Source: Dimorphilus gyrociliatus
Taxonomy: Eukaryota; Animalia; Annelida
Length of the DNA: 64,000 bases
Direction: 5' to 3'
NCBI GenBank assembly: GCA_904063045.1
Contig: CAJFCJ010000024.1
Span: 674,165 to 738,164 of the forward strand
Numbering within the stretch: the first letter of the stretch is position 1; each line of letters starts with the position of its first letter. A program made the translations under genes and the position numbers. Under the pieces are notes generated by a model. It saw only the letters and a list, made by a program, of their open reading frames with translations. It was not told the DNA's origin and did no database searches. Shown piece by piece: positions 1 through 63,682 of the stretch.

Positions 1-1
1 A

Positions 2-394
2 AAACATCTAATTCCCATTAAGTCATCTGAGAATGAAGAAAAACGTTACGTTTTCGCTCAAAATGTCTTGTTAGGTAGCAAAGTTTACTCTGTTGTTGAT
101 GGAAAAGAAATTGAAGATGAAGTTATAGAGATAAGTTCAAAAACATATCAAGGCTATTATTCACCATTAACGTTTCATGGAACAATAGTTATTAATGGCA
201 TTCAGGCTTCCTGTTATGCAGAGGTGGAAAGTCAATCAATATCTCATTGGTCAATGTTTCCATTGAGATCTTTATCCTATATTAAAAATATGCTATCCGT
301 ATCAAAAGTAGAAGATTTTGAAGGTATCCACTGGTATGGAAGACTATCAAAGCAGTACGCATTACCAATAGCCAAGAACTTGGGTATTTTGTAA
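2..394 (+). CDS. Hog (Hint + sterol-recognition region) domain gene, 3' part only; 5' end lies upstream of the window
   Basis: The frame is open from base 2: KHLIPIK...YVFAQNV...GYYSPLTFHGTIVINGIQASCYAEVESQSISHWSMFPLR...EGIHWYGRLSKQYALPIAKNLGIL*. This matches the Hedgehog C-terminal motifs (His of TxxH, APLTxxGTIVVN, ASCYA, H..A.APLR, GIHWY) and is paralogous to the C-terminus of the 1782-3233 ORF. Confidence 0.9.
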   Translation, partial: KHLIPIKSSENEEKRYVFAQNVLLGSKVYSVVDGKEIEDEVIEISSKTYQGYYSPLTFHGTIVINGIQASCYAEVESQSISHWSMFPLRSLSYIKNMLSVSKVEDFEGIHWYGRLSKQYALPIAKNLGIL

Positions 395-1781
395 GGTTGA
401 TTCTTATTGCATTAAAATATTGAATATTCAATAAAATTTAACCTTTCATAAGTTAAATAACTAAACATTTGTCAGTTTTTTTATTATAATCAATTTCTAT
501 TAGAAAAACTAGCTCAACGCCAAAAAGGAATAATGAACTTTTCTTTACTGCTTTATCAGTTTTCGAAATGTATTTTTCCTACTTCCTAAACGATATTTAA
601 GTGGCAGTAGCATTATTAAATTTACATATTCCTAGTTGCAAATACACTGCGAAATGTTAGATTAATTAGGTGGAATAATAGGAGTACGATTGAAAAAATT
701 AGCAATCTTGTAAACTCGCATAATATGATCCTTTTACGTTTTTTTAGTGTAATTAACTGTTTTTGGAATTACTTGATTGTTAAATTTTACAGATAAAAGA
801 TAAGAAGTTAAGTATCTTATTTATTATATTAATACATAAGAAAATGAATCAATTCATTACCTTAAAATGGAAATTTCCCATATGAAAACTTAATTGGAGA
901 TTTTGTAATACTGGACTTACTGTATATTTAACAGATACAAGAATAAATGATTAAAGCAACGATCGAGAATTGAATATACTATATTTAAGATTTAATACGT
1001 AATGCCATAAGAGTCTGTACGATGGATGAGACAGTTTTTAGAAACGTAGCCCTAGAACTTACCATAAATATGTATTCAAATACATCATGTAAGTTTCAAA
1101 ATGGTTTCTCTAGCTATTCGACATAAAATCCTATTCAATTTTATCATTCAAGAAAACTTATAAAAGATATATCTATTCGTTACATTCTGAATATTTTCTC
1201 TTTTAAGTAACAAAAATAACACAGAAGTGAAAATTGAACAGTATAGCAGAGAAACAATACATTATATTTCTTGAGTTGTTTAAATTTAAACGTGATTAAA
1301 AGCTACTGAAACGACTGAAATCATGACTTGCTTGAACATAAATTATGCCTATTCAATTTCATATCCGGCTAAAATAAATCGTCATTTAACTGTGTATCAA
1401 TTCGAATACATTTCATAATCGAATATTTTTAAGCGAAAGCAATATATCGATGAAGATCGAAAAAGCTTCATTTATGAAACATGAATGTTTTATCTACATG
1501 AATTTGATAATAAAAAAAACACAATTGTTTCTTTAAAATGTATCTACAGTTTAGTTTTATTCCGCTAGACTATTTAATTAGCTAATGAAAATTAAACAGA
1601 AAGAATTAAACACAAGTAGCAGATTTAAAACATTAATATATGACTAAGCTAAAAAAAATTCAGTAAATTGCCAATCACTTCTTAAAGAGTGAAAAATTGT
1701 TTATGGCAAAAAAATATATTAAAATATTCAGGTATAAAATTGTCTTTTTACCACGTATTTCATTAAAATGGCTAATAAGTT

Positions 1782-3233
1782 CTAAGTTGATAGCTGAAAA
1801 CCGAGGTTTTGTGCCAATGGTAGAATATAATTTTGTGACATTTCACCATACCAATGAATTCCTTCAGAGGAATCTATGCTAGACTTCAATCCAATTATTG
1901 AGTTATATAATTGCAATACCCATCTAAGTGGAGCCATGGCCAAGTGTGCAATTTCATGACTATTGATTACGGCGTAGCATGATGCTTCAATCCCATTTAC
2001 TATCACTGTTCCATCAGCTGTCATTGGAGCATAAAACCCATTCATTTGTATTTCTTCAATAGATATCACCTCGGTCACTTTTTCAATTCCATTATCTTGA
2101 GAATATAACTTTTGTCCTATTCTTACTTGATCAGCATGAATATAGCGTTTACCATCAGCAGTTTCAACAGCGATCAGATGTTGGTGTGTAAGTTGAATAA
2201 AATGCCCACTTTTTGTACGTAAAGTAAGAAATAGTGCTGGTTCTTGTGTATTTCTATCAAGCATAGTAAGAACTGGACTGAAACGACCTTTAGAAGAGAG
2301 AACAGAATCACCAAGTTTTAATTGCTTCATTGAAATCGTCTGTCCATTTTCAAGTACAACTTTACTTTCACCAGAAAAACATGATTTTCCATAGAGCTTT
2401 TGAATACCTTTTTTGTCATCTGAATTCAGTTTATAATTCTGTCCCTTATAAGAATAGTACGGATACATAATTGCCTGACTCTTACTGGAATGCTTCAAAC
2501 CCAAAGCATGTCCGAGTTCATGACAAGCAACTACCGACAGATGTATCTTATTATTTGACGTACTCCATTTTTCAGCTTCGTCGAAATGGATTTGACCCTT
2601 TCTTGAGGTTTTTGGATAGAAAGCATGGGCTAAAGTTCCAGATGGTCCATCCATGGGATAACCATCTCCATGTGCACCACTAACAAATCTAAATTTCAAA
2701 TGGACATTTCCAGAATAAACTCTTGTAAACTTCAATTTGCTATTGTCAGACCACTGTTTTAGTGCATATTTTATTGCAGCAACCACTGAAACATTTGGTA
2801 TATCAGGTGTATAGTTATACAACCTCCATTTAAGCTTCTTCCTATTCCATTTTTTACCATATAATGCATAACGCTTTTGTCTGCCAGTATTCGGAGCTCT
2901 AAATTCATCGTCAACTATCCCGCATCGTTCTTTATTCATTAGTGACAAAGTTCTTGCATCAAGTTTACCAGTAACGGGTATTGCGGCTTCCTTTTGAAAT
3001 CTTTTCAGACCCTCAGCATAATCATCTGTTTGATTGTGTGTAGTCTTGGACATATGCTCATACTTTTGCAAATATGATCTTGCTTCACGCTCACTTTTAA
3101 CTGCAAGGATACGAGTAGATGAGTCTCGTTTCTCTCTTAATTTAGATTGAACCAAATTATTTTCTTCCAGATTCTCCTTAATTGCAGCAGACATTACAGC
3201 CGTAATAAAGCATAAAAGAATTAATGCCTTCAT
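1782..3233 (-). CDS. Secreted matrix metalloproteinase (M10A-like) fused to a Hedgehog-type Hog autoprocessing domain, 483 aa, intronless CDS
   Basis: Signal peptide MKALILLCFITAVMSA; pro-domain (LKRFQ...PVTGKLD..T..LMNKERCG, Cys104 switch); furin sites REKR (33-36) and RQKR (118-121). Structural-Zn residues lie in AHGDG, LAHAF and QIHFD, followed by HELGHALGLKH (238-248) and the Met-turn AIMYPYY. After GKS|CF (Cys285, codon 2381-2379) come MLDRN, LTHQH, FYAPMTADGTVIVNGIEASCYA and the SRR motifs HLAMAPLR and EGIHWY. Confidence 0.97.
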   Translation of the reverse strand: MKALILLCFITAVMSAAIKENLEENNLVQSKLREKRDSSTRILAVKSEREARSYLQKYEHMSKTTHNQTDDYAEGLKRFQKEAAIPVTGKLDARTLSLMNKERCGIVDDEFRAPNTGRQKRYALYGKKWNRKKLKWRLYNYTPDIPNVSVVAAIKYALKQWSDNSKLKFTRVYSGNVHLKFRFVSGAHGDGYPMDGPSGTLAHAFYPKTSRKGQIHFDEAEKWSTSNNKIHLSVVACHELGHALGLKHSSKSQAIMYPYYSYKGQNYKLNSDDKKGIQKLYGKSCFSGESKVVLENGQTISMKQLKLGDSVLSSKGRFSPVLTMLDRNTQEPALFLTLRTKSGHFIQLTHQHLIAVETADGKRYIHADQVRIGQKLYSQDNGIEKVTEVISIEEIQMNGFYAPMTADGTVIVNGIEASCYAVINSHEIAHLAMAPLRWVLQLYNSIIGLKSSIDSSEGIHWYGEMSQNYILPLAQNLGFQLST

Positions 3234-6024
3234 ATCTTCTTTTTGCCAATTTAAAAATTATATATTTTATAGATGTTCTGTCTTCCTTACTTGAAGGAAC
3301 TCTGTTCCACTATGTACTTTTACTTACTTATATACGGTTCTCATTTTGCCCCAGTAACCAAAAAAGTAAGCTTGTTTACGACATTTATGCTATTTTTAGA
3401 AAATTTAGCGTGTCTTCGTGTCTTGAACAGCTGAAATTGCAATTTTTTTTTTTCAAAGCCTGATGAGTATTTCGCTACAAGTATAAGGCAAAATTTAAAT
3501 AACCCACGCTTGTATCTGATATAACTATATAACAATTCAGGAAGCAGAATTCTGCTTACCTGTCCCAATGCATGTATTTTCAATTATATTATATATTCCA
3601 AAATATCCTCAACATTAAGTTTATTCATTTAAAAATAGCTGATTATTAGTTGAAAAAACTGTTTAGAAAGATTCTACTCTAATTTTTTAATTAGGTCAAC
3701 TAGTTTTTAAACCAAATTTATTAGAACTATGTCAGGCTTGTTTTTCTAATATGTTTGTTATACAATCAAAAGTTTAATAAATAGGTTAAAATTATTAGAC
3801 AAAAATTGATAATATCAACATGAAGATGAATGATTACCTTTATAAAGAATATTGTAAACATTTAATCTTTCTGTTCTGATAGAGAAAAATTCAATAAAGT
3901 AAGCCCTCCCAGTGGAAATTTATCTCAAGTACAACATATATCTAATTGTATGTTTTAAAGACAAATATCTCTTCTTTCTTTTTTTCAAAAGATCTGACGA
4001 TTTTATTTTGAATTTAATATTGTTTGTAAAAGCTTTTGCAATATGGCTTGAATTTTTATAGTAAAAATTGACTTTCTTTTTACCTTGCTGTTTATTCTTT
4101 AGAGACTTTTTTCTTAAATATTAAATTTACACAGATATCACAAATTTGAAATTTTCAGAATAGTTTTTAATTCATTCTCATAATATTAAATTACGTTCCT
4201 TTTCATGGAGAACAGAATCGACAAGTTTCTATTGAAATAGTCTATGTACTGTTTTCTGACCCTTAAGTCACTGCTAATTCGTCGTTAACGAATAGTTAGA
4301 ATTTTTTTAATAGTTCAACAAAATTATCATTTGAATGCAGAAATGAATCATGACTGAAATTGTATTTCATTTTTGTTAATACTTCTCAACTATCGTATCA
4401 AATGGATCACTATATATTTGAGATTTCTTTGTTAATTCTTACTGATCCGATCTTCATCACCATCATAGTATTACAACATTTGAAAATTCTGACCATTCAA
4501 ATTACCTTTTATATTGATAGCTACAAGTTGAATCGATATAGCTGCATTGCCTGGCAAATTCAACTGCAAAATTTAAATTGCAAACATCGGATCACTTCCG
4601 AGAAACATATTTTCATAATATAATCTTGTTTCTTTTACAATAAACTTTTTAAAAGCATTACTATCATTCAAGAAATCGTTGTATTCCACAACATTCGTTT
4701 CGTCGTTTCTGCATGTTTATCAAAGATCTTACTAGGAGAGATTTTTTCATCGTCACACAAAGAAGTATTGTTTACATCTGATAATAGCATCTCCAGCGGA
4801 AGGCTATAGCTGTAAATTCTATAGACTAAAACTAATTTGATATATTGAAAAGAACTGATTGAAATGTGCCAATAGTTTTTCACAAGCATCAAAAAATATT
4901 TTTAGATTAAAAGAAAAAAAGAGAATATTAAAAATATGAAATCGTTAAATCGATCTTTTATTAGGAAAAGAATTATTTACCAATATTAAATCTGTATCTA
5001 AAAGTCTTATTAATTATTAAAGTATTTGCTAAAAACCAGTGGGCGAAATAGTAACGAAACACAGATTATATTATTTATAAATATATTGTAAACAAATTAG
5101 ATTAAGTGGCACTACTGCTTTCAAACTTTTCAAAGAGAGGATAAGACAGAAAGAGAGAGAGAGAGAGTACAAAATTCTGTTGAATTTAGAGCTATTCGAA
5201 ATGAAAATTCAACACAAACTCTTATTCTTTCTTTTATTTGTATTTCTGAATTGTAATTGTATTAATAAAATATATTTTTTATTAATCATCGTTAAACATT
5301 CAACGATTATTTTTTGAGTCATTTTTAGAAGGAATTTACTTAATCATCAACCTTACGCTAACAGGAAAAAGAGGAAATCCCCCTGTTTTACTATCATTAA
5401 ACTATAGAGTTTTAAGTCTTTATTCAAATTTTTACAGCACTTTAAAATGAACGATTTTTTAATGTTTTCCATTAAAAACTAAGAAGCTATCAAACGTGAT
5501 CTTGTTTATTACTAGTTACTATAGAGATAGCATTTTTTGTGTTGATCTCTTTCCTTTTGCGTCAATTGTATAAATATTTAATCTTTCCTTGAGCTATTCA
5601 AAGAGATTTAATAGTTTGTCACTGTTTTTAAGTAAAACTGTAAAAGAGTTAGAGAAAAAGTTCAATATTAAAGAATTGTGTGTTTTAAAGGAATTAAACT
5701 TTTATACTTTTATGAAAAGTTGATAAAAGTCAAGCTGCTTTGCAAATTATTGAAATATAATTATTAATAATTCATATATGAAAATGAGAACAATTAATCT
5801 ATATTATACAATATTTATTGAACAGTTAATTATAATAGACGTCAAATTAATTAGAATTGGAAGTAATATGTATATTTCAAGTTAAACATCTACTTATAAA
5901 GGTAAATTTTTGTAACATTTCTTTATTTAAAAGAGTTTAAAACTCTTTTGGTCTAAAAATTTTTAATAACTAAAATCTTTGTAACTCTTTGATTTCTAAT
6001 ATTAAAGATTTCTTATAATTTAAC

Positions 6025-7318
6025 CTAAATATATGCTAATAAAATGGACAAAATGATGACAATCTTTCCTATTTTCATTTCGGAAGCATCATTGCAGATT
6101 TTCTGTCCTCCATCTGTAAGAAAATGATATTTTGCATTTAGTTTATCAATATCTTTGTCTTTAAATAATTAGACTGAAGATAGGAAACTATACCGCAATA
6201 TCCGCACAATGCTTTACAATTTGACTTCATAAAGTCAATTATTGTCGGATTTTTGCATACCGACTTTGGATAACCAGGACTTTTACCGCACTTTGAATGA
6301 TTATCCTTACAATCCTCTGTTAAATAAAGAAATATTAAGTATTTCTCAATACATGCTTCGGAAAACTTTATATTTACCGGAACAATCACCTCCAGTCCAG
6401 CCAGTAGAACACTTACATTTACAATTCGATGAATTTAGTGTACCACAATTTTTACACTTGAGAGGACAAGCTAGAAAGGCGAGATTAATCAATGGAATCT
6501 TTGTGTGCTTATTAATAATTGATTATGTACTGTAATACTTACTACAATCACCGGAAGCAGAACTGCAAGAATCTGCAAAATGGTTTTAATGGATTTTATT
6601 ATTCTAAATAAACCATAAATAATCAACTCATATTACCGCATAAACCATCTCGACACCATCCAGAGCCTGATGAACAGAGTGAACATGCATCACCTTTCTT
6701 AAAAGGTTTTTGCCCTTTGAAATTTCCCCTAAAGAGAAAATTTAAATAAATTCAACTAAGAATTATCACCAAAAAGAAAACTAACGGTGGAGAATAATTG
6801 CAGACAATATAGTGTACATTATTTTTAACTTTTCCATTATCCTCGGTTAACTTGGAACAGTATTTATAACCGCAACCAAGACGATTAGTGTCTGCCCAAA
6901 CAACTTGGGTGTAATGACCGCAAACTTTACTACACGATAGCTTATTGTAATTGTAATCTTTTTTCTCATTATACCAAGCCTTAACAACTGCCTCCATATC
7001 AGTATATTGTCCCGAACCGCCAGAAATGAACAAATTTTGACCAGCACTGCCATCAACACCTTCAGTCTTGTCGAATCCATGTTCGAAATGACATTTTTCG
7101 GCCCATTTAGAAGCCTGATTAGCCAAAGGTCCATTCCAAGACATAATTTTCATGTCAGCTGCTCCTTCCTGTCTTCTTAATTTATTATGAACATCAAGAA
7201 TCGCTTTTTCAAGTGAACCAGATAAAACTTCACAAAAAACTTTTCCATAAAAGCCTAAAATTAGAAAAGTAAGGAAGTGCAATATGAGAAGACTTAATTT
7301 ATCTTTAAATACAATCAT
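6025..7318 (-). CDS. CAP/SCP-domain protein with EGF-like and ShKT domains and a probable GPI signal (6 exons, about 319 aa)
   Basis: Exons 7318-6786, 6728-6637, 6572-6543, 6470-6378, 6316-6194, 6113-6025 are all GT-AG and phase-consistent. Signal peptide; CAP motifs HNKLR, GQNL, WYNE, GHYTQVVW, VCNYSPPGN; EGF-like CPLKCKNCGTLNSSNCKCKCSTGWTGGDC; ShKT-like CKDNHSKC...CKALCGYC; hydrophobic tail IVIILSILLAYI*. Confidence 0.92.
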
Positions 7319-8164
7319 TCTTTTTTGAAAAGAAAGTTTTCAAAATGTTATATTGGCGTCTATAAGAAAAATGAATGATTGTCACGATTTAATATTTACA
7401 AAGTGTCCTTTAAAAATGTATTGGCAAACAGTCGTTTCTATGGTATAATCAATATAGTTTTCATGGTTGCTACCTGTCTTTCAAAGAATATTTCCAGTTA
7501 CATCCTGACTAATTATACTAACAAACTAATCTTATATCCATTTTATCCATTCTTATTCCTTTTTACATAGCCAATGCAGTAGGAATTTAATTAGCTAGTA
7601 TACCAACTTTTTTAAATGTTATTTTCGTGTAATCCATTAGTTCTTGAATAATACTCATTTATTCAGTTTCTATAATAAGAATTAATGAAAATATTCATTG
7701 AGACGTTGTTAACATTATACAAACTTTTAAGAAAATAATGGAATTTCCTACTGTAAATACACTCGACTTAATCAGTATTGAAATCTCCTTCCGGTCCTTT
7801 TCATACAAAACTTTTCGCTCTTTTTTAAATATGATAAACCTACAAAAAAAAGAAAGGTGAGCAATTATGTAATTTTAACAAACGGTATTATGACAATACC
7901 TACAAGTAAATTGCGAAATAGATATGATGTATGATAGAGATTTAGTAACATTAACGTAAATATAAATGTATTCTCTTTCTAATTAGAAGTACTTGTATAG
8001 CCTTAAAAAAAAAGTTTCTTTTCATTTCGTTAAATTATACAAGATTTAAATATTCAAGTTAATGAAAGTCTTAACTTGGAAACTTTTAGCAATCAGTCAC
8101 CTCAAAAGATGCTTACTAAGCATTATACCATTCCATTATACTATAGTTAAGAAGAAGTTTGAAA

Positions 8165-8600
8165 CAGAGTTTACAGAGTAAGTTCCTACATTGTTGTATA
8201 ATTAAAGAGGATCCTTTAAACGATATTTAAATTGGTTGTGCAACATTTTTGAAGAGCTGCACTCGTTTTATAAACAAACGTTTAAACGCAGAAAGATAAA
8301 ACTCTTTTCCAATTTCATCTCGGAAGTAAGCTCTACAGCACTCTGTAGAATATTTTCATTTGCAGTTCGTAGAGTGTTAGTGCACCACCATTTTAACACC
8401 TGAGAGGAAAAGCTAGAAGAGTTCGATTAATCAATGCACTCTTTTCGTGTATGTTGATGATTGATTAGATACTTCAACGTGTACAATAGCCATCGAAGGT
8501 AGATCATCAAGTGGAATCTATAGAAAAATGATTTCACTGTCCTTGTTAAAAGTTTTAACTTTAAAATCTTGTTACATAAACTTTTTGCAACACTGTGCGT
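8165..8600 (-). pseudogene. Decayed partial duplicate of the CAP-EGF-ShKT gene
   Basis: Bases about 8375-8470 align at DNA level with 6428-6537 (acceptor plus EGF exon, e.g. ttctag|cttttcctctcaggtgttaaaat versus ttctag|cttgtcctctcaagtgtaaaaat). The copy has a stop and a frameshift. Flanking blocks weakly resemble the neighbouring exons. Confidence 0.7.
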
Positions 8601-8839
8601 TCCTCTTGAACTTATAGACTTAAACCAGCATTGATAAATCCGTTTCGTTTCTATGTTCAAAACGTTAATAATTTTTCGCTTGACATTTTTACAAGTCCGC
8701 TCAACCATACTTGCGATCTCATAAAAGATCATCTATATTGTTTTCTTAGTTGACAATAAAATTGGTTAGCGTTTTTAAAAGCGAGCAGCTGTCCACGAAA
8801 TTGATTGGGTACTTGATTTAAATCATTTTTAAGCAATAG

Positions 8840-9538
8840 CTCCCTATTTTTACTCCCATTTCTAATACATCTTTTCATTTGGGACAAGATGAATGGACTT
8901 GTGCGAAGGCATCATACCCCACCCCCACCAAGTGCTTTTCGATGGATGCAACTGTGAGGGTAATAGAAGATCGCCATATAAGAATAGGTCAATTAAATAT
9001 AGGTGACCTAACTCAAGGAGTTAATGGGCAGTTTACAATGATTCGGACAATGCGTCACAGTATTTGTTGAAAGAGATTGAAATTTATTAGCTTTCAAAAG
9101 ACGGAGAAAATGTCGTTAACAGTAACGCTGAATCAGCCATATGCCGTTTTTAAAGATAATACTGAAGAGTGTATATGTGCCAAAAAGTATCATTTGGTTC
9201 AAGAATTTCAACAATTAATAGTAGAATAAGGTCAGAGGAAAAGGTCACGTGCATTGGGAAAGTATTGAAGAAGGGCATTTCGCTCCATTAACGATGGACG
9301 GCACCCTAGTGGTTAACGGTATTCAAAGGTCCTATTACGCCGTTTATTAATAATCATAAAAAAGCCAGAATGTTCATCGCACAAGTTTAGATGAATTAAC
9401 TATTTCTAAAGCGCCATCTTTAGCTCCTACAAGAAACTAAATGTAAATCCTGACAATACACTTCGATATGGAAAGTTATCCTACGTTTACTTGAATTCAA
9501 TGGCCACCCGGCTAGGACTCGCAAAGTCCATTTCTTAA
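8840..9538 (+). pseudogene. Hog-domain pseudogene, third paralog
   Basis: Reading across stops and frameshifts gives PTK|CFSMDATVRV...IGQLNIGD, LTVTLNQ (TxxH His lost), GHFAPLTMDGTLVVNGIQRSYYAV, INNHKKARMF and RYGKLSYVYLNSMATRLGLAKSIS*. The last segment matches the tails of the other two Hog genes. Confidence 0.88.
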
Positions 9539-10269
9539 AATGTTCTTTCTTGTTTGTTTAGTCCGACTATAGTATAAAATAAGAATTTTAGAACGAATTT
9601 TCGTTTCTTGCAAGGCCAATTTCTTTAAAACTGTCGGGTTATCTGATAGTTTTTTCACCGCCTTTCCTTCTGGTAACAATAAGACTTTTAATGCGATATC
9701 ACCTAAAACCTGAAGTTAATTTCTATCTGTGAAAAATCAACCTGTTTTTCATTTTAATATTACACAATATACGTAAATATCAACTTAAAAGGTTCAGTTA
9801 GGTCTATTTAATCATCAATTTCCAATATTTGTCAGAAATGCGATTATAAGCATCGAATAACAATTACAAGGAAATTATGGAATTGTAAAAAATGTAAACT
9901 TATTTTCGCATTTTTTCTGTCTGCTTCTATATATCTCTCTATCAGTTGATCTTCCTGTCTCTCCCTCTATCACTCTCTATCTTTATTTCTCTAGACAGTT
10001 TTTTCCCTACGGCGAATCATAGAGATATTAAAGCTATCACAACAGATGGCGCCAAAAGAGACATACCTTTTTTTCTCTATTCAGCAATACACGGTATTGT
10101 CGTATTGTAAAGTTGGTATACCTCAAACTTTTCTATCTACAATTTTCGATATTATTATTTATATATACATATATATATATATATATATACTGTATATATA
10201 CAGCATATATAAAGCATAAACAAGCTTGCTATCTTATTAAAGAATACTTTACAATCGTCTACAAAATAA

Positions 10270-41700: not shown

Positions 41701-42638
41701 AAATCTCTTCCCTTAGGTCAAAAAACTAAAACTCTCAGTAAAAGTCTACTAATAAAATTCCTGTGTTTTCAGCTGTTCAACACGAGCGAGGACCTAGAAA
41801 AGGGAAACAAAAGCAAACTGTAACGAAAGAAACAATTAACGCCCCAAAATCAATCCCTTCGGCCGTTACACCTTCACCACCTGTTTCTACTCGACCCTCG
41901 GTTATAACGCCAGTAGATCTTAGGTTAAAATTGCCTCAGCCAACTCCTTCAGCTCTTATCTTACCAACTTTATTGCACGGTCTCATTGGAGCAGAAAGAG
42001 TGACGGACGCCGCTGTTATAGCTGGAAGAATTGGAGAAAGTTTACAAGAGATTACAGCCAGACTGCTTTTTTCGGTAGTCACGTGGTGTAAGCAGGTGGC
42101 TCCCCTTCGGGCGTTGACTGTCGCTGATCAACTATTGCTGGTTGAGCACTCCTGGAGAGATCTGTTTGTACTGTCATTAGCGCAGTGGCATGTTCCCCTC
42201 GAAGTGAATACAGTATTGGAGTGTGGAGGCGTTCAAAGGCAAACCATGGCTCCTGATACTTTAGCTATATTGCTCTCACACATAAGACAGCTGAGAGATG
42301 TTGTTGGTCGAGTGAAGGCCCTGAATCTAGATCCAACCGAATATGCTTGCCTAAAAGCCATTGCCCTATTTAAGCCAGAATTGAGGGGACTGCGAGAAAC
42401 GTCTATAGTCGAAGAACTACAAGATCAGGCACAATATCTGTTGGCCGAGTACGAGAAGCAACAGATCGCTCAGGCACAGAGATATTCAACAAGATTCGGC
42501 AAAGTTCTCTTGTTACTACCAGCTCTTGCATCAGTAAATTCAGCGGCTTTGGAAAAGCTCTTCTTTCATGAAACAGTAGGGAACGTTTCCATTGAACGAT
42601 TAGTTGTTGATATTTATCATACTGAGAATTACGATTAA
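38747..42638 (+). CDS. dsf: Nuclear receptor of the NR2E family, dissatisfaction ortholog (4 exons, 375 aa)
   Basis: Exons 38747-38765, 39918-39998, 40103-40264, 41773-42638. The [72 protein letters not shown]...[14 protein letters not shown] carries the dsf-type residues (GDRSSG, YSCDGCSG, SIHRNR) rather than tailless-type ones. The ligand-binding domain is complete and ends [10 protein letters not shown]. Confidence 0.92.
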
Positions 42639-48790: not shown

Positions 48791-53384
<4,594 letters not shown>

Positions 53385-60708: not shown

Positions 60709-63682
60709 ATGGCAGAAGTAAAGCATACCGAAAATTTTCAAGTATGTTTTTTATCTATTATTATTTATTATTTCATTCTATAAATTAGAAGAATGTACTT
60801 TTAATGTGATAAACATAACCGTTAATTAATCTGACTGACCCAAGAGATATCAGCGATAAGTAAAATGTTTGCGATTTTCGCTTAGCTTTTTAATTTCATA
60901 ACCATGCCTGATTTTAGCAGCCTACCGAAGAGAATGCTGATGTTAAAGATGCTAAAGAATTATCAAATCCCAAAGAAAGTCCTGACAGAGCGGTAAAATC
61001 ACATAAAAAAAACGGAGCCGATAGTAAAGATTCAACGGTTTCGGCTGGTTCAAAGAAAACCAAAGCTGACAAGAAAGTGGGTTAGTATACTTTACACACA
61101 TTTTATTCTAGTAAACCTTTCCACGAAGGAGGTATGTTAGAGATGTCGTCGTTTCGAATTAGCGAGTGAACCGATAAGAGAGGGATGAATTGAGAATTTC
61201 ATTTAATTTTCTAGTGGCCATTTAAAAGTCCATGTCATGATTCAGAAAAGTAATTGCATATATATTAACACTAATTCATTATTCTTTAAAAAAACCTTAA
61301 AATTTGTGTTATCAACATAATAAATTCCTTTCTTTCGATAAATTATAAACTTAACATAGAAACCTAATTTTTATAAAAGTATTAAACAGGTGAAAACATT
61401 TGAAATGTTTGATATTTTCTCTCGTTCCTCTCTCTTCTCTCTCTCCCCTCCCCTTTCGCTATCCCTATTGTCTATTTATATTTTACATTAAGGAACCAAA
61501 GGAAAAGTATTAGGCTATCGTTTAAAGTCAGATGGCTGAAAATGACGAACGTTTTATGTTTTTATAACAAGAATGCAAGTTTTCGTCTATTTATATTGAG
61601 AAATAAAAAGCTTAATATTTTGATGGGTACAAAAATAATATTTCCACCCCCTCACGCCCCAATTGGCTTATTCAAAGAAATCTGTTTTCTCTTTTCTTGT
61701 GTTCTTTTTTTTTTCCAAATTTCAAACACGGCGAAAGAGAATTTTTTATACAAATACTAGGTGGCTACGTGACATGAAATTGTTATTTTATTTTGAAATT
61801 ATATATTAATATATGTATTAATATAAATATTATATATATATATACATTAGACTTACACTTTAAAGTAACTATATGCCCATAACGAATAATCCAAGTTATT
61901 TTATATTAATTATAGCTAATCATACAAGTTGAGGGAAGATAGATTTAAATTTGAAATATGAAGTACTACCAATGTATTTAGTTTATTTGGTCTTGTTTTA
62001 TTTATCTAGAACGTATTAAGTCTACTGAAAATACAATCCGGTTTACATATGATAGAAATGTCAACTAAACTTGTTTAGACAGATTTACAGTTCTAGTCGG
62101 AAAAACCAATATGCCATTTATCGTATACAGTCAAGTTTTTATATTTTTTTATACTTTCTATTTTTATTTGCGATTAACTTCAATTAAATATCAATTAATA
62201 ATTAATAACAAGGTATACAGAATTATAATTCTGACTGTTTCTATTTTTTTTGCTAGTGCCTTCGATATATTCTAAATAACCATAATAATAAAAGAACGAA
62301 AATAAAGAGAAACTTGACTAGGCTTATTAAGCAAATGTTCTAAAAACAGATTTGATTTCATTATTAGTTTATTGTTTAGTTTATTATAATGTTTTATTCA
62401 TATTTTGCTTTCAGCTGAAGTTATAAAGGGTCTTTCTGGTCTTTCGACGACGGAGGAGAAGCTAACAGCCTTATGTAAAAAATATACAGAACTTGCTGAA
62501 GAAAATCGCACTTTGATGCATAAACAAAAAGTTAATACCAAGAAGCTAGCAACAGTCACTAAAGAGAAAGAACAGGCTCAGGCGGAGCATGGAAAAGCTG
62601 TACTTGCCAAAGGTCAATTGGAAGGTTTATGTCGCGAACTACAGAGAAGATGTAAAGAGGCAAAAGAAGAAACGCTGCATGAAGTTCGATCAGAAGAGGA
62701 GAAAAGAAAAAAGATAGTTGATACTTTTCAAACAACTATAAATGAGATTCAAGGCCAAATAAATGGTCATCAAGAAACAAATATAAAACTGAGAGAAGAA
62801 AATATCAAACTCGCTGAACAATTAAAAAGTTTAATAAATCAGTATGAAGAAAGAGAAAAGGTTGGTTAAAATATAAACTGCAAATGTATTAAAAACTCAA
62901 ATATAATTAATACTTTTATATTAGCATATAGAAGAAATATTGAAACATCGCGAACTAGAAAAACAACTCTCCGATGCAAAAAATGCTCAAATTTTGTTAC
63001 AATTAGCTCAAGAGCAAGAAAACAAGCGTAAAATATTGGAAGAATTGGAAAATAATTTGAGGCGAATAGCGTTAATGGAAGAACATGAAAAACAACTCAA
63101 AGCCCAAGTAGATAGAATTTAAATCTTTATTTTGTTGTTAAACAATTACATAAAATTTACTTTACCTAGATCAAAATGTACACCGAAAAATACGAAGAGT
63201 TCCAAGGAACCTTAACAAATAGTAATGAGGTTTTGAAAGCGTTTAAGGCTGAAATGGACGCTATGACTAAACGTATGCGAAAGATGGAGAAGGATGCAGT
63301 ATCATGGAAAACTAGATGGGAGAATAGTAATAAGACTCTGATACAAATGGCTGAAGAAAAAACTAGGCAGGACAAAGAAGCTCTTCTTTCCCAATCAAGA
63401 ATTAATAAACTTGAAAGTTTATGCAGAGCTTTACAAGCCGAAAGATACAAGCTTGCTAAAAAAGATCAAGTGCCGAAAGAGGAGGTTACTGAAGAAGCCA
63501 AAAAAGATAATGAAGAAAATGAAGAACAAACTTCAGAGAGTCTTGAACCTCCTAATAGTGAAAATAATTCGAAAAATGATGAAAATGATGATAACAAAGA
63601 AAACGAAGAAGAAACTGGTAAAGAGAAAGAAGAAACTCCAAAACCAGTTGAAGATGAAAATGTTCATACTGAACAAAACTAA
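60709..63682 (+). CDS. Taxilin family coiled-coil protein
   Basis: A short first exon 60709-60741 (MAEVKHTENFQ) is followed by exons carrying the taxilin motifs KGQLEGLCRELQ, REENIKLAEQLK.LI.QYEERE, MYTEKYEEFQGTLTNSNEV..FK.EM.AM.KRMRKMEK and LESLCRALQ. Confidence 0.93.

What the first reader, a model, noticed from the sequence alone, without database searches (positions are those of the whole stretch)
1..9538. Local expansion of a non-Hedgehog Hog family with a shared private C-terminal signature
Seen: three Hog domains within 9.5 kb in +, -, + orientation. They end in a common tail: WYGRLSKQYALPIAKNLGIL, WYGEMSQNYILPLAQNLGFQLST and RYGKLSYVYLNSMATRLGLAKSIS. This differs from Hedgehog tails as I recall them. 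Inference: a lineage-specific Hog cassette is being duplicated and attached to different secreted N-terminal domains, with birth and death, similar to the nematode hedgehog-related expansion.
Basis: partly seen in the sequence, partly recalled or inferred. Interest (0 to 1): 0.75.

Follow-up and report, generated by a model that had tools for sequence, protein, structure and literature searches.

The report
Protease genes carrying Hedgehog's self-cutting module

Summary
The window is from Dimorphilus gyrociliatus, a miniature annelid. The three Hog domains are real, but this is not one Hog cassette attached to different partners. Each intact copy is a single-exon gene: signal peptide, MMP pro-domain and matrixin catalytic domain, fused directly to a Hint+SRR (Hog) module.

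- **Array:** three intact genes (one wholly upstream of the window, one cut by the window start, one at 1782-3233) and one decayed copy (8927-9538). A fifth gene lies on another contig.
- **Origin:** the MMP domains of all copies form one clan, so one fusion was followed by whole-gene duplication. The paralogues are old (synonymous sites saturated) and under purifying selection.
- **The tail:** it is the second helix of Hedgehog's sterol-recognition region. It opens with the canonical GIHWY hinge and keeps Y-x-L-P. Only the G-x-x-S…LPxAxxLG stretch is specific to this clade.
- **Predicted function (not shown):** all autoprocessing residues are kept, so the proteins probably cut themselves after the protease domain and may gain a sterol.
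- **Distribution:** an exhaustive profile search found the fusion only here and in two unnamed sequencing runs, one shown by synteny to be a diverged relative. I found no paper describing it.

The scan had already noted this family, here and on another contig.

The parts
1..394 (+). 3' end of MMP-Hog gene 'MH2'. The whole gene is G000:C24:673185-674558, i.e. window -979..394, 457 aa. The window holds the last 131 codons of its Hog domain (second half of Hint, SCYA, SRR with GIHWY, tail) and the stop codon.
   Evidence: tblastn, 42% identity to the Hog of the 1782-3233 gene, E=1.4e-30. Pfam Hint E=4e-25; the complete ORF in L001 has Peptidase_M10 followed by Hint.
1782..3233 (-). Complete single-exon MMP-Hog gene 'MH3' (483 aa plus stop), made of signal peptide, pro-domain, matrixin catalytic domain, Hint and SRR.
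   Evidence: ORF. Peptidase_M10 E=9e-55, Hint E=2.6e-47, PG_binding_1 E=3.4e-5. AlphaFold2 mean pLDDT 86.9. Foldseek matches to proMMP-10/-3/-1/-9; phmmer match to Drosophila Hh over the whole Hog.
2847..3233 (-). MH3 residues 1-129: signal peptide (aa 1-16), PG_binding-like pro-domain, cysteine switch E-R-C-G-I-V-D (aa 102-108), furin-type site R-Q-K-R (aa 118-121), and the start of the catalytic domain.
   Evidence: coordinates; PG_binding_1 at aa 50-99; pro-domain plus catalytic domain superpose on proMMP structures, target-normalised TM 0.88-0.90.
2388..2852 (-). MH3 matrixin catalytic domain (aa 128-282). It has the structural-metal loop H-G-D-G-Y-P-M-D-G...L-A-H-A-F (aa 188-205), the zinc motif HELGHALGLKHS (aa 238-249) and the Met-turn A-I-M-Y-P (aa 254-258). 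It ends in L-Y-G-K-S, directly before the Hog cysteine.
   Evidence: Peptidase_M10 1-159/159; (rmsd about 1 A and 45-47% identity to the MMP-1/-8/-13 catalytic domains).
1968..2381 (-). MH3 Hint module (aa 285-422): nucleophile Cys285 (C-F-S-G), Asp309 (L-G-D-S-V), Thr349/His352 (L-T-H-Q-H-L), Cys419 (S-C-Y-A).
   Evidence: all of these are invariant in the four paralogues; invariant also against Hedgehog; aligned to Hh-C 1AT0 and to the D243, T267 and H270 positions of human SHH.
1785..1967 (-). MH3 sterol-recognition region (aa 423-483).
   Evidence: helices 426-447 and 460-476; GIHWY and Y-x-L-P align with Hedgehog. PMC7906309 defines helix-loop-helix, HPR and the HWY hinge in human SHH.
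8927..9538 (+). Decayed MMP-Hog copy (pseudogene), of which only Hog remnants survive. 8933-9067 is the Hint start C-F-S-M-D... followed by a stop at 9068. 9071-9229 is in the same frame (TxxH His lost). 9249-9353 is in another frame (H-F-A-P-L-T...S-Y-Y-A, then stops). 9461-9535 is the tail. No MMP part is detectable upstream.
   Evidence: tblastn pieces, three-frame translation; profile matches E=1.7e-7 and 5.3e-5, one with a TGA inside; joins the local clade, SH-aLRT 97, branch length 3.3.

Best explanation
The region is the right-hand part of a small tandem array of MMP-Hog genes in Dimorphilus gyrociliatus.

**Gene structure.** Each gene encodes, in one exon, a secreted pro-matrix-metalloproteinase. 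The usual hinge and hemopexin domain are replaced by a Hedgehog-type autoprocessing domain (Hint fold plus sterol-recognition region).

**Evolutionary history (largely shown).** One fusion of an MMP gene with an Hh-type Hog module took place in the dinophilid lineage. Whole-gene duplications followed: three intact copies and one pseudogene on contig 24, and one two-exon copy on contig 2. The copies have since been under long purifying selection.

**Mechanism (inferred from conserved residues and from what Hog domains do in Hedgehog).**
1. In the secretory pathway, Cys285 attacks the preceding peptide bond to form a thioester, helped by Thr349 and His352.
2. Asp309 activates the hydroxyl of a sterol held by the SRR helices.
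3. The sterol displaces the Hog domain. This releases a pro-MMP of about 284 residues ending ...L-Y-G-K-S with a sterol ester at its C-terminus.
4. Furin-type cleavage at R-Q-K-R removes the pro-domain.

The result would be a minimal, matrilysin-like protease held on membranes by a lipid, functionally comparable to GPI-anchored MT-MMPs.
For: **Organism.** Hits are named D. gyrociliatus and lie on the same 1,101,111-bp contig.

**Architecture.**
- Pfam finds PG_binding_1 + Peptidase_M10 + Hint in uninterrupted ORFs of 457-483 aa in three paralogues, and in two independent assemblies of other samples.
- The AF2 model has pLDDT 86.9, with proMMP-like and Hint+helix-loop-helix parts.
- phmmer against PDB aligns residues 2-190 of the Hog to full-length Drosophila Hh, including GIHWY and Y-[IV]-L-P.

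**Catalytic set.** Invariant across the paralogues: C285, D309, T349, H352, C419, H430, P435, R437. GIHWY is kept in the three array copies and as GVHWY in the orthologue.

**Single fusion.** MMP domains of all six members form one clan (89/96). The AU test does not reject one clade for their Hog domains (p=0.356).

**Constraint.** dN/dS is about 0.1-0.3 in the MMP, Hog and SRR parts, with dS saturated.

**Orthology.** The contig-2 copy is collinear over 12.7 kb with a contig from SRR23372229.

**Restricted distribution.**

**Genome context.** The same genome also holds conventional MMP-hemopexin genes, so the Hog replaced hemopexin in one subfamily only.

**Literature.** The SRR motifs are diagnostic of Hh-type Hog domains (PMC2362128). 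HPR and the HWY hinge are needed for cholesterolysis in human SHH (PMC7906309).
Against: - No biochemical or expression evidence was available. Cleavage, the adduct and transcription are all untested here, and the Logan contig L009 is genomic, not a transcript.
- The residue before the nucleophilic Cys is Gly in Hedgehog. Here it is Ser (MH3, contig-2 copy), Thr (MH1), Lys (MH1 orthologue) and Gly only in MH2. This could slow or change the reaction.
- The second SRR helix is modelled with low confidence (pLDDT 53-63). It is 3 residues shorter and more polar than in Hedgehog.
- The contig-2 paralogue has lost GIHWY altogether, so at least that member may not use a sterol.
- MH1 and MH2 have lost the loop that carries the structural-metal ligands of vertebrate MMPs. 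MH2 has also lost the furin site and the Gly of the cysteine switch. Not all copies need be active proteases.
- The Hog tree backbone is unresolved, so the donor of the Hog module is unknown.
Confidence: 0.7

Rival explanations
1. One reading: a lineage-specific, non-Hedgehog Hog cassette is copied and attached to different secreted N-terminal domains, as in the nematode hedgehog-related genes.
For: Three Hog domains lie close together in mixed orientation, and one is decayed. Other Hog fusions with other cargoes do exist in public data (LDLa+Hint, MACPF+Hint).
Against: - All intact copies have the same N-terminus.
- Their MMP domains are one clan.
- The own genome has only 7 Hint loci: 4 MMP-Hog genes, 1 pseudogene and 2 true hedgehogs.
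- The SRR is of the Hedgehog type.
- The Hog has only two cysteines, so it lacks the nematode-type central pair (PMC2362128).
Confidence: 0.04
2. The Hog domain cleaves itself off by hydrolysis or with a non-sterol nucleophile. It would then act only as a removable C-terminal pro-piece, or as a secretion or folding aid. The mature MMP would be soluble.
For: - Residues other than Gly precede the Cys in most copies.
- The contig-2 paralogue lacks GIHWY yet is conserved (68% identity to its orthologue, dN/dS about 0.15).
- Burglin 2008 (PMC2362128) notes that the adduct of non-Hh Hog proteins is unknown and uses the term 'adduct recognition region'.
Against: The array copies keep the full SRR signature (HPR, a short loop, the HWY hinge, Y-x-L-P) under purifying selection. 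That is hard to explain if no sterol-like adduct is bound. Asp309, the residue that activates the sterol in Hedgehog, is invariant.
Confidence: 0.2
3. The Hog domain is not cleaved at all. It replaces hemopexin as a permanent C-terminal membrane-binding or ligand-binding domain.
For: It occupies the position of hemopexin. The first SRR helix is a membrane-surface helix in human SHH (PMC7906309).
Against: Every residue needed for thioester formation (Cys, Thr, His) is invariant over saturated synonymous divergence. The pseudogene lost exactly these residues once constraint lapsed.
Confidence: 0.05
4. The fusion is an assembly or gene-model artefact.
For: None found. It was considered because new domain combinations in draft genomes are often chimeric models.
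Against: - The junction lies inside uninterrupted ORFs in raw DNA in three paralogues.
- The same junction is present in two independent Logan assemblies of other samples.
- One of these sits in conserved microsynteny with the contig-2 locus.
Confidence: 0.01

Closest known systems
Hedgehog proteins (Hh/SHH), specifically their C-terminal Hog domain (Hint + SRR)
   Same: Same fold and same motif set: Cys nucleophile, the Asp of G-D-x-V, T-x-x-H, S-C-Y-A, an SRR first helix with H...P-x-R, a short loop, the G-I-H-W-Y hinge and Y-x-L-P. There is 33-38% identity to Hh Hog domains, and the alignment to Drosophila Hh is end to end.
   Different: The cargo is a pro-MMP instead of the HH_signal (Hedge) domain. 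The residue before the Cys is mostly not Gly. The second SRR helix is 3 residues shorter and has a clade-specific sequence. The genes are single-exon, whereas this genome's own hedgehogs have the Hog on a separate exon.
Nematode hedgehog-related proteins (warthog, quahog, hog-only) and Lophohog of molluscs and Capitella
   Same: [quoted passage not shown] The family is lineage-specific, with duplication and loss (PMC2362128, PMC9695228).
   Different: In those families the N-terminal domains are novel, non-enzymatic and family-specific. Here it is a well-known enzyme. Nematode Hog domains have altered SRR motifs and a central Cys pair (PMC2362128); these keep the Hh-type motifs and have no such pair. 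No Lophohog sequence could be fetched, so the relation to Lophohog Hog domains is untested.
Matrilysins (MMP-7/-26) and GPI-anchored MT-MMPs (MMP-17/-25)
   Same: After the predicted cleavage the product would be a minimal pro+catalytic MMP like matrilysin. The nearest language-model clusters are matrilysins. If lipidated, it would be membrane-tethered by a C-terminal lipid like the GPI-anchored MT-MMPs. The furin-type R-x-K-R activation site is as in MT-MMPs (this comparison rests on established knowledge of MMP classes).
   Different: No hemopexin domain, no TM segment and no GPI signal. The tether would be a sterol ester made by the protein's own C-terminal domain. MH1 and MH2 lack the structural-metal loop.

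Membership tests
Hog domain of the Hedgehog type (Hint, PF01079, plus SRR) | Match to the Pfam Hint module above the curated cut-off | tested here: met
   161.6 bits for MH3 and 89.1 bits for the window fragment of MH2, against a cut-off of 29.7. The pseudogene scores 18.7-24.3 bits, below the cut-off.
Hog domain of the Hedgehog type (Hint, PF01079, plus SRR) | Catalytic residues: N-terminal Cys, Asp, Thr-x-x-His, and the Cys of S-C-Y-A | tested here: met
   C285, D309, T349, H352 and C419 are invariant in four paralogues and against Hedgehog. His and the second Cys are lost in the pseudogene.
Hog domain of the Hedgehog type (Hint, PF01079, plus SRR) | SRR helix-loop-helix with the H..P.R motif and the HWY hinge (motifs K/L of Burglin 2008; PMC7906309) | tested here: met
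   H430/P435/R437 and G-I-H-W-Y at 458-462, with modelled helices 426-447 and 460-476. Met in the three array copies and the MH1 orthologue. The HWY hinge is NOT met in the contig-2 paralogue and its orthologue.
Hog domain of the Hedgehog type (Hint, PF01079, plus SRR) | Gly immediately before the nucleophilic Cys (G-C-F) | tested here: not met
   S-C-F (MH3), T-C-I (MH1), S-C-F (contig-2 copy), K-C-I and S-C-F (orthologues). Only MH2 has G-C-F. This is a preference of Hedgehog rather than a fold-defining feature.
Hog domain of the Hedgehog type (Hint, PF01079, plus SRR) | Actual autoproteolysis with sterol transfer | not testable with these tools
   Needs expression and mass spectrometry.
Bona fide Hedgehog protein | N-terminal HH_signal/Hedge domain (PF01085) | tested here: not met
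   Pfam finds PG_binding_1 and Peptidase_M10 instead. The genome's two true hedgehogs are elsewhere, on C5 and C12.
Matrixin / MMP (Peptidase_M10, M10A) | Full-length match to Peptidase_M10, HExxHxxGxxH zinc motif and Met-turn | tested here: met
   185.3 bits over 1-159/159. H-E-L-G-H-A-L-G-L-K-H-S and A-I-M-Y-P are present; the motif is conserved in all paralogues. Catalytic-domain rmsd is about 1 A to MMP-1/-8/-13.
Matrixin / MMP (Peptidase_M10, M10A) | Pro-domain with cysteine switch (P-R-C-G-x-P-D) | tested here: met
   E-R-C-G-I-V-D in MH3, V-R-C-G-F-P-D in MH1, P-R-C-G-N in exon 1 of the contig-2 copy. It is degenerate (P-R-C-K) in MH2. The pro-domain superposes on proMMP structures.
Matrixin / MMP (Peptidase_M10, M10A) | Structural zinc/calcium loop (H-x-D...H...H ligands) | tested here: inconclusive
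   Present in MH3 and the contig-2 copy (H-G-D-G-Y-x-x-D-G...L-A-H-A-F...I-H-F-D). Deleted or substituted in MH1, its orthologue and MH2. The ligand identities come from established MMP structures, not from a test here.
Nematode Hh-related Hog proteins | Two extra conserved cysteines in the central Hog region and altered K/L motifs (PMC2362128) | tested here: not met
   The MH3 Hog has only Cys285 and Cys419, and its K/L-type motifs are of the Hedgehog kind.
Lophohog | Lophohog-specific N-terminal domain | not tested
   No Lophohog sequence was returned by any search, so no direct comparison was made. The N-terminus here is fully accounted for by the signal peptide and the MMP pro- and catalytic domains, which leaves no room for another domain.

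The most novel reading that the evidence does not exclude
MMP-Hog proteins are natural sterol-esterified proteases. This would be a second class of secreted animal proteins, besides Hedgehog ligands, that attach cholesterol to themselves through a Hog domain. It would give dinophilid worms a self-made lipid-anchored metalloproteinase, and show that an Hh-type Hog module can be redeployed intact onto an enzyme.
Probability: 0.4. Interest if true: 0.8.

Novelty: new variant of a known kind. Interest (0 to 1): 0.6.

Why it matters
- **A new kind of cargo.** Covalent cholesterol attachment through a Hog domain is, to my knowledge, established in animals only for Hedgehog ligands. Whether the many 'Hog' proteins of other lineages receive a sterol has been open since they were described (PMC2362128).
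- **A cleaner test case.** Here the Hog domain keeps the complete Hedgehog-type sterol-recognition signature under purifying selection, and the cargo is an enzyme whose activity and location are easy to assay. Whether a non-Hedgehog protein is naturally cholesterol-modified therefore becomes directly testable.
- **MMP biology.** It adds a previously undescribed way to replace the hemopexin domain and possibly to tether an MMP to membranes.
- **For the scan.** The 'different partners' idea should be dropped.

Tried and rejected
1. **MMP remnant upstream of the pseudogene.** tblastn with word size 2 using all four paralogues on 7301-10000 found nothing better than E about 5. Either the MMP part was deleted or it has decayed beyond detection.
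2. **Rooting the Hog tree.** I used MACPF+Hint proteins as outgroup. The outgroup attached to the long branch of this worm's own hedgehogs (93/96), most likely long-branch attraction, so I draw no conclusion on the donor of the Hog module.
3. **Monophyly of all six MMP-Hog Hog domains.** The contig-2 pair sits on a very long branch (2.0-2.35) and wanders between trees. The AU test does not reject one clade (p=0.356), but this does not prove it. The MMP-domain tree is the better evidence.
4. **Naming the two Logan runs** (SRR23372229, SRR31984831). No paper in the library cites them. SRR23372229 is identified only as a diverged relative, by synteny and about 30% GC. SRR31984831 has only a 2.2-kb contig of similar GC and was not otherwise placed.
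5. **Expression evidence.** The exact products of this genome are not on record in the contig index, and L009 is genomic DNA with an intron-like sequence upstream.
6. **Lophohog and nematode Hog sequences.** None of the three word-index searches returned them, and I did not type sequences from papers.
7. **Spliced and broken genes.** The contig-2 gene has two exons. I searched and aligned only its large exon by reference (L004:916-2073) and did not join the exons; the database's own record P0168 was used where a full-length row was wanted. The pseudogene was read through only with X at each break.
8. **Human DNA.** Nothing in the window looked human.

Full report
**What is in the sequence**

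The window is AT-rich eukaryotic DNA (about 28% GC). It maps to G000:C24:674165-738164 of a 77.9-Mb assembly. Database hits to the encoded proteins are named Dimorphilus gyrociliatus and lie on a contig of the same length, 1,101,111 bp.

- **Window 2-394 (+):** the tail of a gene cut by the window edge.
- **Window 1782-3233 (-):** a complete 483-aa ORF.
- **Window 8927-9538 (+):** a fragmented copy.

**The partners are not different**

The 483-aa ORF scores Peptidase_M10 (matrixin) at E=9e-55 over the whole model, Hint at E=2.6e-47, and a PG_binding-like MMP pro-domain. A Hint search of the whole assembly gives only seven loci:
- Three intact genes plus the fragment on contig 24.
- One gene on contig 2.
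- Two canonical hedgehogs on contigs 5 and 12, with Hedge-domain exons.

Reading the flanks gives these gene models:
- **MH2** is the copy cut by the window. It is a 457-aa single-exon ORF (window -979..394).
- **MH1** is a further intact copy of 464 aa, 443 bp upstream of MH2.
- The **contig-2 gene** has a small first exon (signal peptide, pro-domain) and a large second exon.

All of them have the same order of parts: signal peptide, pro-domain with cysteine switch, matrixin catalytic domain, then the Hog cysteine two to a few residues after the conserved L-Y-G end of the catalytic domain.

**One fusion, then gene duplication**

I built a tree of MMP catalytic domains: six MMP-Hog members, ten other MMP loci of this genome and 20 external MMPs. 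It puts all MMP-Hog members on one side of a branch (89/96; 90% of bootstrap trees).

The Hog domains of the array copies form a strongly supported clade (99/99, 100/99). The pseudogene, read with X at each break, joins it (SH-aLRT 97).

The contig-2 pair sits on a very long branch whose place is unstable. An AU test does not reject a single clade of all six (p=0.356).

The same genome has ordinary MMP-hemopexin genes, so the Hog replaced hemopexin in one subfamily only.

Synonymous sites between paralogues, and between each gene and its orthologue in other samples, are saturated (dS 1.4 to above 2). dN/dS is about 0.1-0.3 in the MMP, Hog and SRR parts alike. The array is therefore old and maintained, not a recent burst.

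**The third copy is a pseudogene**

- It has an in-frame stop at 9068 and two frame changes.
- T-x-x-H has become T-L-N-Q-P, and S-C-Y-A has become S-Y-Y-A.
- No MMP part is detectable upstream.

Birth and death is therefore supported.

**The tail**

Hedgehog proteins fetched here end in the same G-[IV]-H-W-Y followed by ...Y-x-L-P or a variant. These include Spea and Lepisosteus SHH, Drosophila, Adelges, Styela, spiders, Priapulus and Owenia. phmmer aligns the whole Hog of the window protein to full-length Drosophila Hh (6TD6), including G-I-H-W-Y and Y-[IV]-L-P, and aligns the hinge to human SHH.

In human SHH this is the 'HWY hinge' that opens the second helix of the sterol-recognition region. 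The first helix carries an H...P.R motif needed for cholesterolysis (PMC7906309). The window protein has H430, P435 and R437 with the same spacing. The AlphaFold2 model (pLDDT 86.9) shows helix 426-447, a 12-residue loop and helix 460-476.

Burglin (PMC2362128) treats the two SRR motifs as diagnostic of Hh-type Hog domains and as a sign of derivation from a hedgehog gene.

Two tail profiles show what is shared and what is not:
- A profile that includes G-I-H-W-Y finds about 119 Hedgehog tails in the fetched set.

So the anchor is shared with Hedgehog. The clade-specific part is the body of the second helix (G-x-x-S-x-x-Y-x-L-P-x-[AV]-x-x-[LI]-G, with a spacer three residues shorter). The contig-2 paralogue has lost the hinge.

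**Distribution**

I ran a profile of four paralogues against 1.84 billion cluster representatives with HMMER and no word index. The claim of lineage restriction rests on absence, which is why this costly search was used.

Of the 150 best hits I scanned with Pfam all that had more than one matched stretch, together with the other top-ranked hits. Only four clusters combine Peptidase_M10 and Hint:
- Two are from this genome.
- P0012 has 58% identity to MH1.
- P0014 has 68% identity to the contig-2 copy.

P0012 and P0014 come from Logan assemblies of runs SRR31984831 and SRR23372229. The 12.7-kb contig that holds P0014 is collinear with D. gyrociliatus C2:4476148-4486708, at 35-75% protein identity in the neighbouring genes and about 30% GC. 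It is an orthologous locus in a clearly diverged relative. I could not name the species.

The ESM Atlas has no large cluster with this architecture.

I found no paper that mentions an MMP-Hog or matrixin-Hint fusion. The D. gyrociliatus genome paper mentions neither hedgehog nor metalloproteinases.

**How it most likely works**

Shown:
- The architecture.
- Conservation of every residue that Hedgehog uses for thioester formation and sterol transfer.
- The Hedgehog-type SRR.
- A complete-looking pro-MMP in MH3, with cysteine switch, R-Q-K-R furin-type site, zinc motif, Met-turn and structural-metal loop.
- Purifying selection.

Inferred:
- In the secretory pathway Cys285 forms a thioester with Ser284.
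- A sterol bound by the SRR resolves the thioester.
- The pro-MMP is released with a C-terminal lipid, and a furin-type protease activates it.
- The product would be a matrilysin-sized MMP tethered to membranes.

My odds: about 0.7 for self-cleavage, and about 0.4-0.5 for a sterol adduct in the array copies.

Caveats:
- Most copies have a residue other than Gly before the Cys.
- The second helix is shorter, more polar and weakly modelled.
- The contig-2 copy has lost GIHWY.
- MH1 and its orthologue, and MH2, lack the structural-metal loop. MH2 also lacks the furin site, so some copies may have changed function.

**Verdict on the finding**

| Item | Verdict |
|---|---|
| Observation | Partly confirmed |
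| Interpretation | Partly supported: lineage-specific family, monophyly, and birth and death hold; different N-terminal partners and a non-Hedgehog private tail do not |

The underlying object, an old array of MMP-Hog genes, is a new variant of a known kind (Hog-domain proteins with non-Hedge cargo). It is of real interest to people who study Hedgehog autoprocessing and MMPs.

The scan had already noted the same family on this stretch (s1-080176, s1-080177, s1-084126) and on contig 2 (s1-080203).

**Handling notes**

- The two-exon contig-2 gene was searched exon by exon by reference, and the exons were not joined.
- The pseudogene was read through only with X at the breaks.
- No contig looked human.

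Noticed in passing
window 6138-7318 (-): Between the MMP-Hog genes and the pseudogene lies an unrelated secreted-protein gene. It has a CAP/CRISP domain exon (6752-7318; PF00188 E=1e-23) followed by a ShK-domain exon (6138-6389; PF01549 E=2.8e-5).
   Followed up: partly
L005 (G000:C5:1847249-1850746) and L006 (G000:C12:150728-154207): D. gyrociliatus has two canonical hedgehog genes that are each other's closest relatives (100/98), although most protostomes are reported to have one (PMC9695228). Both have a degenerate SRR in which the HWY hinge is replaced (I-D-I-Y and I-N-Y-Y). The best-preserved Hedgehog-type SRR in this genome is therefore in the MMP-Hog genes.
   Followed up: partly
L003:715-2106 (MH1), L001:730-2100 (MH2), P0012: MH1, its orthologue and MH2 have lost the loop that carries the structural zinc/calcium ligands of vertebrate MMPs, while keeping HExxHxxGxxH and the Met-turn. 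MH2 has also lost the furin-type site and the Gly of the cysteine switch, and its MMP domain sits on a very long branch (3.3).
   Followed up: partly
proteins P0235, P0273, P0276, P0322, P0323 (ENA/Logan, unnamed organisms): These are LDL-receptor class A repeats (PF00057) fused to a Hedgehog-type Hog domain. Their Hog domains form one clade (100/100) that in one tree is sister to vertebrate Hedgehogs (89/95). This is another non-Hedge cargo on an Hh-type Hog.
   Followed up: partly
proteins P0335-P0350 (NCBI/ENA, unnamed organisms; contigs up to 1.8 Mb): A family of about 500-aa proteins combines MACPF (PF01823) with a Hint/Hog domain. Their tail reads I-H-P-Y...L-P, so a pore-forming-type domain is also found as Hog cargo.
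   Followed up: no
protein P0024 (Acipenser ruthenus 'Sonic hedgehog protein A', 473 aa): This record holds two tandem Hog domains and no Hedge domain. It is probably a gene-model or assembly duplication.
   Followed up: no
window 41763-42638 (+), 49688-50305 (+), 62405-63682 (+): Ordinary genes are present elsewhere in the window: a nuclear-receptor ligand-binding domain exon (PF00104), MBT repeats (PF02820) and two Taxilin exons (PF09728).
   Followed up: no
L008 (Logan SRR23372229 contig, 12.7 kb) against G000:C2:4476148-4486708: Gene order and spacing are conserved over the whole contig between D. gyrociliatus and an unnamed diverged relative: MMP-Hog, a 1248-aa fn3 protein, then a GFO_IDH_MocA oxidoreductase. 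The compact gene spacing at this locus is thus shared.
   Followed up: partly
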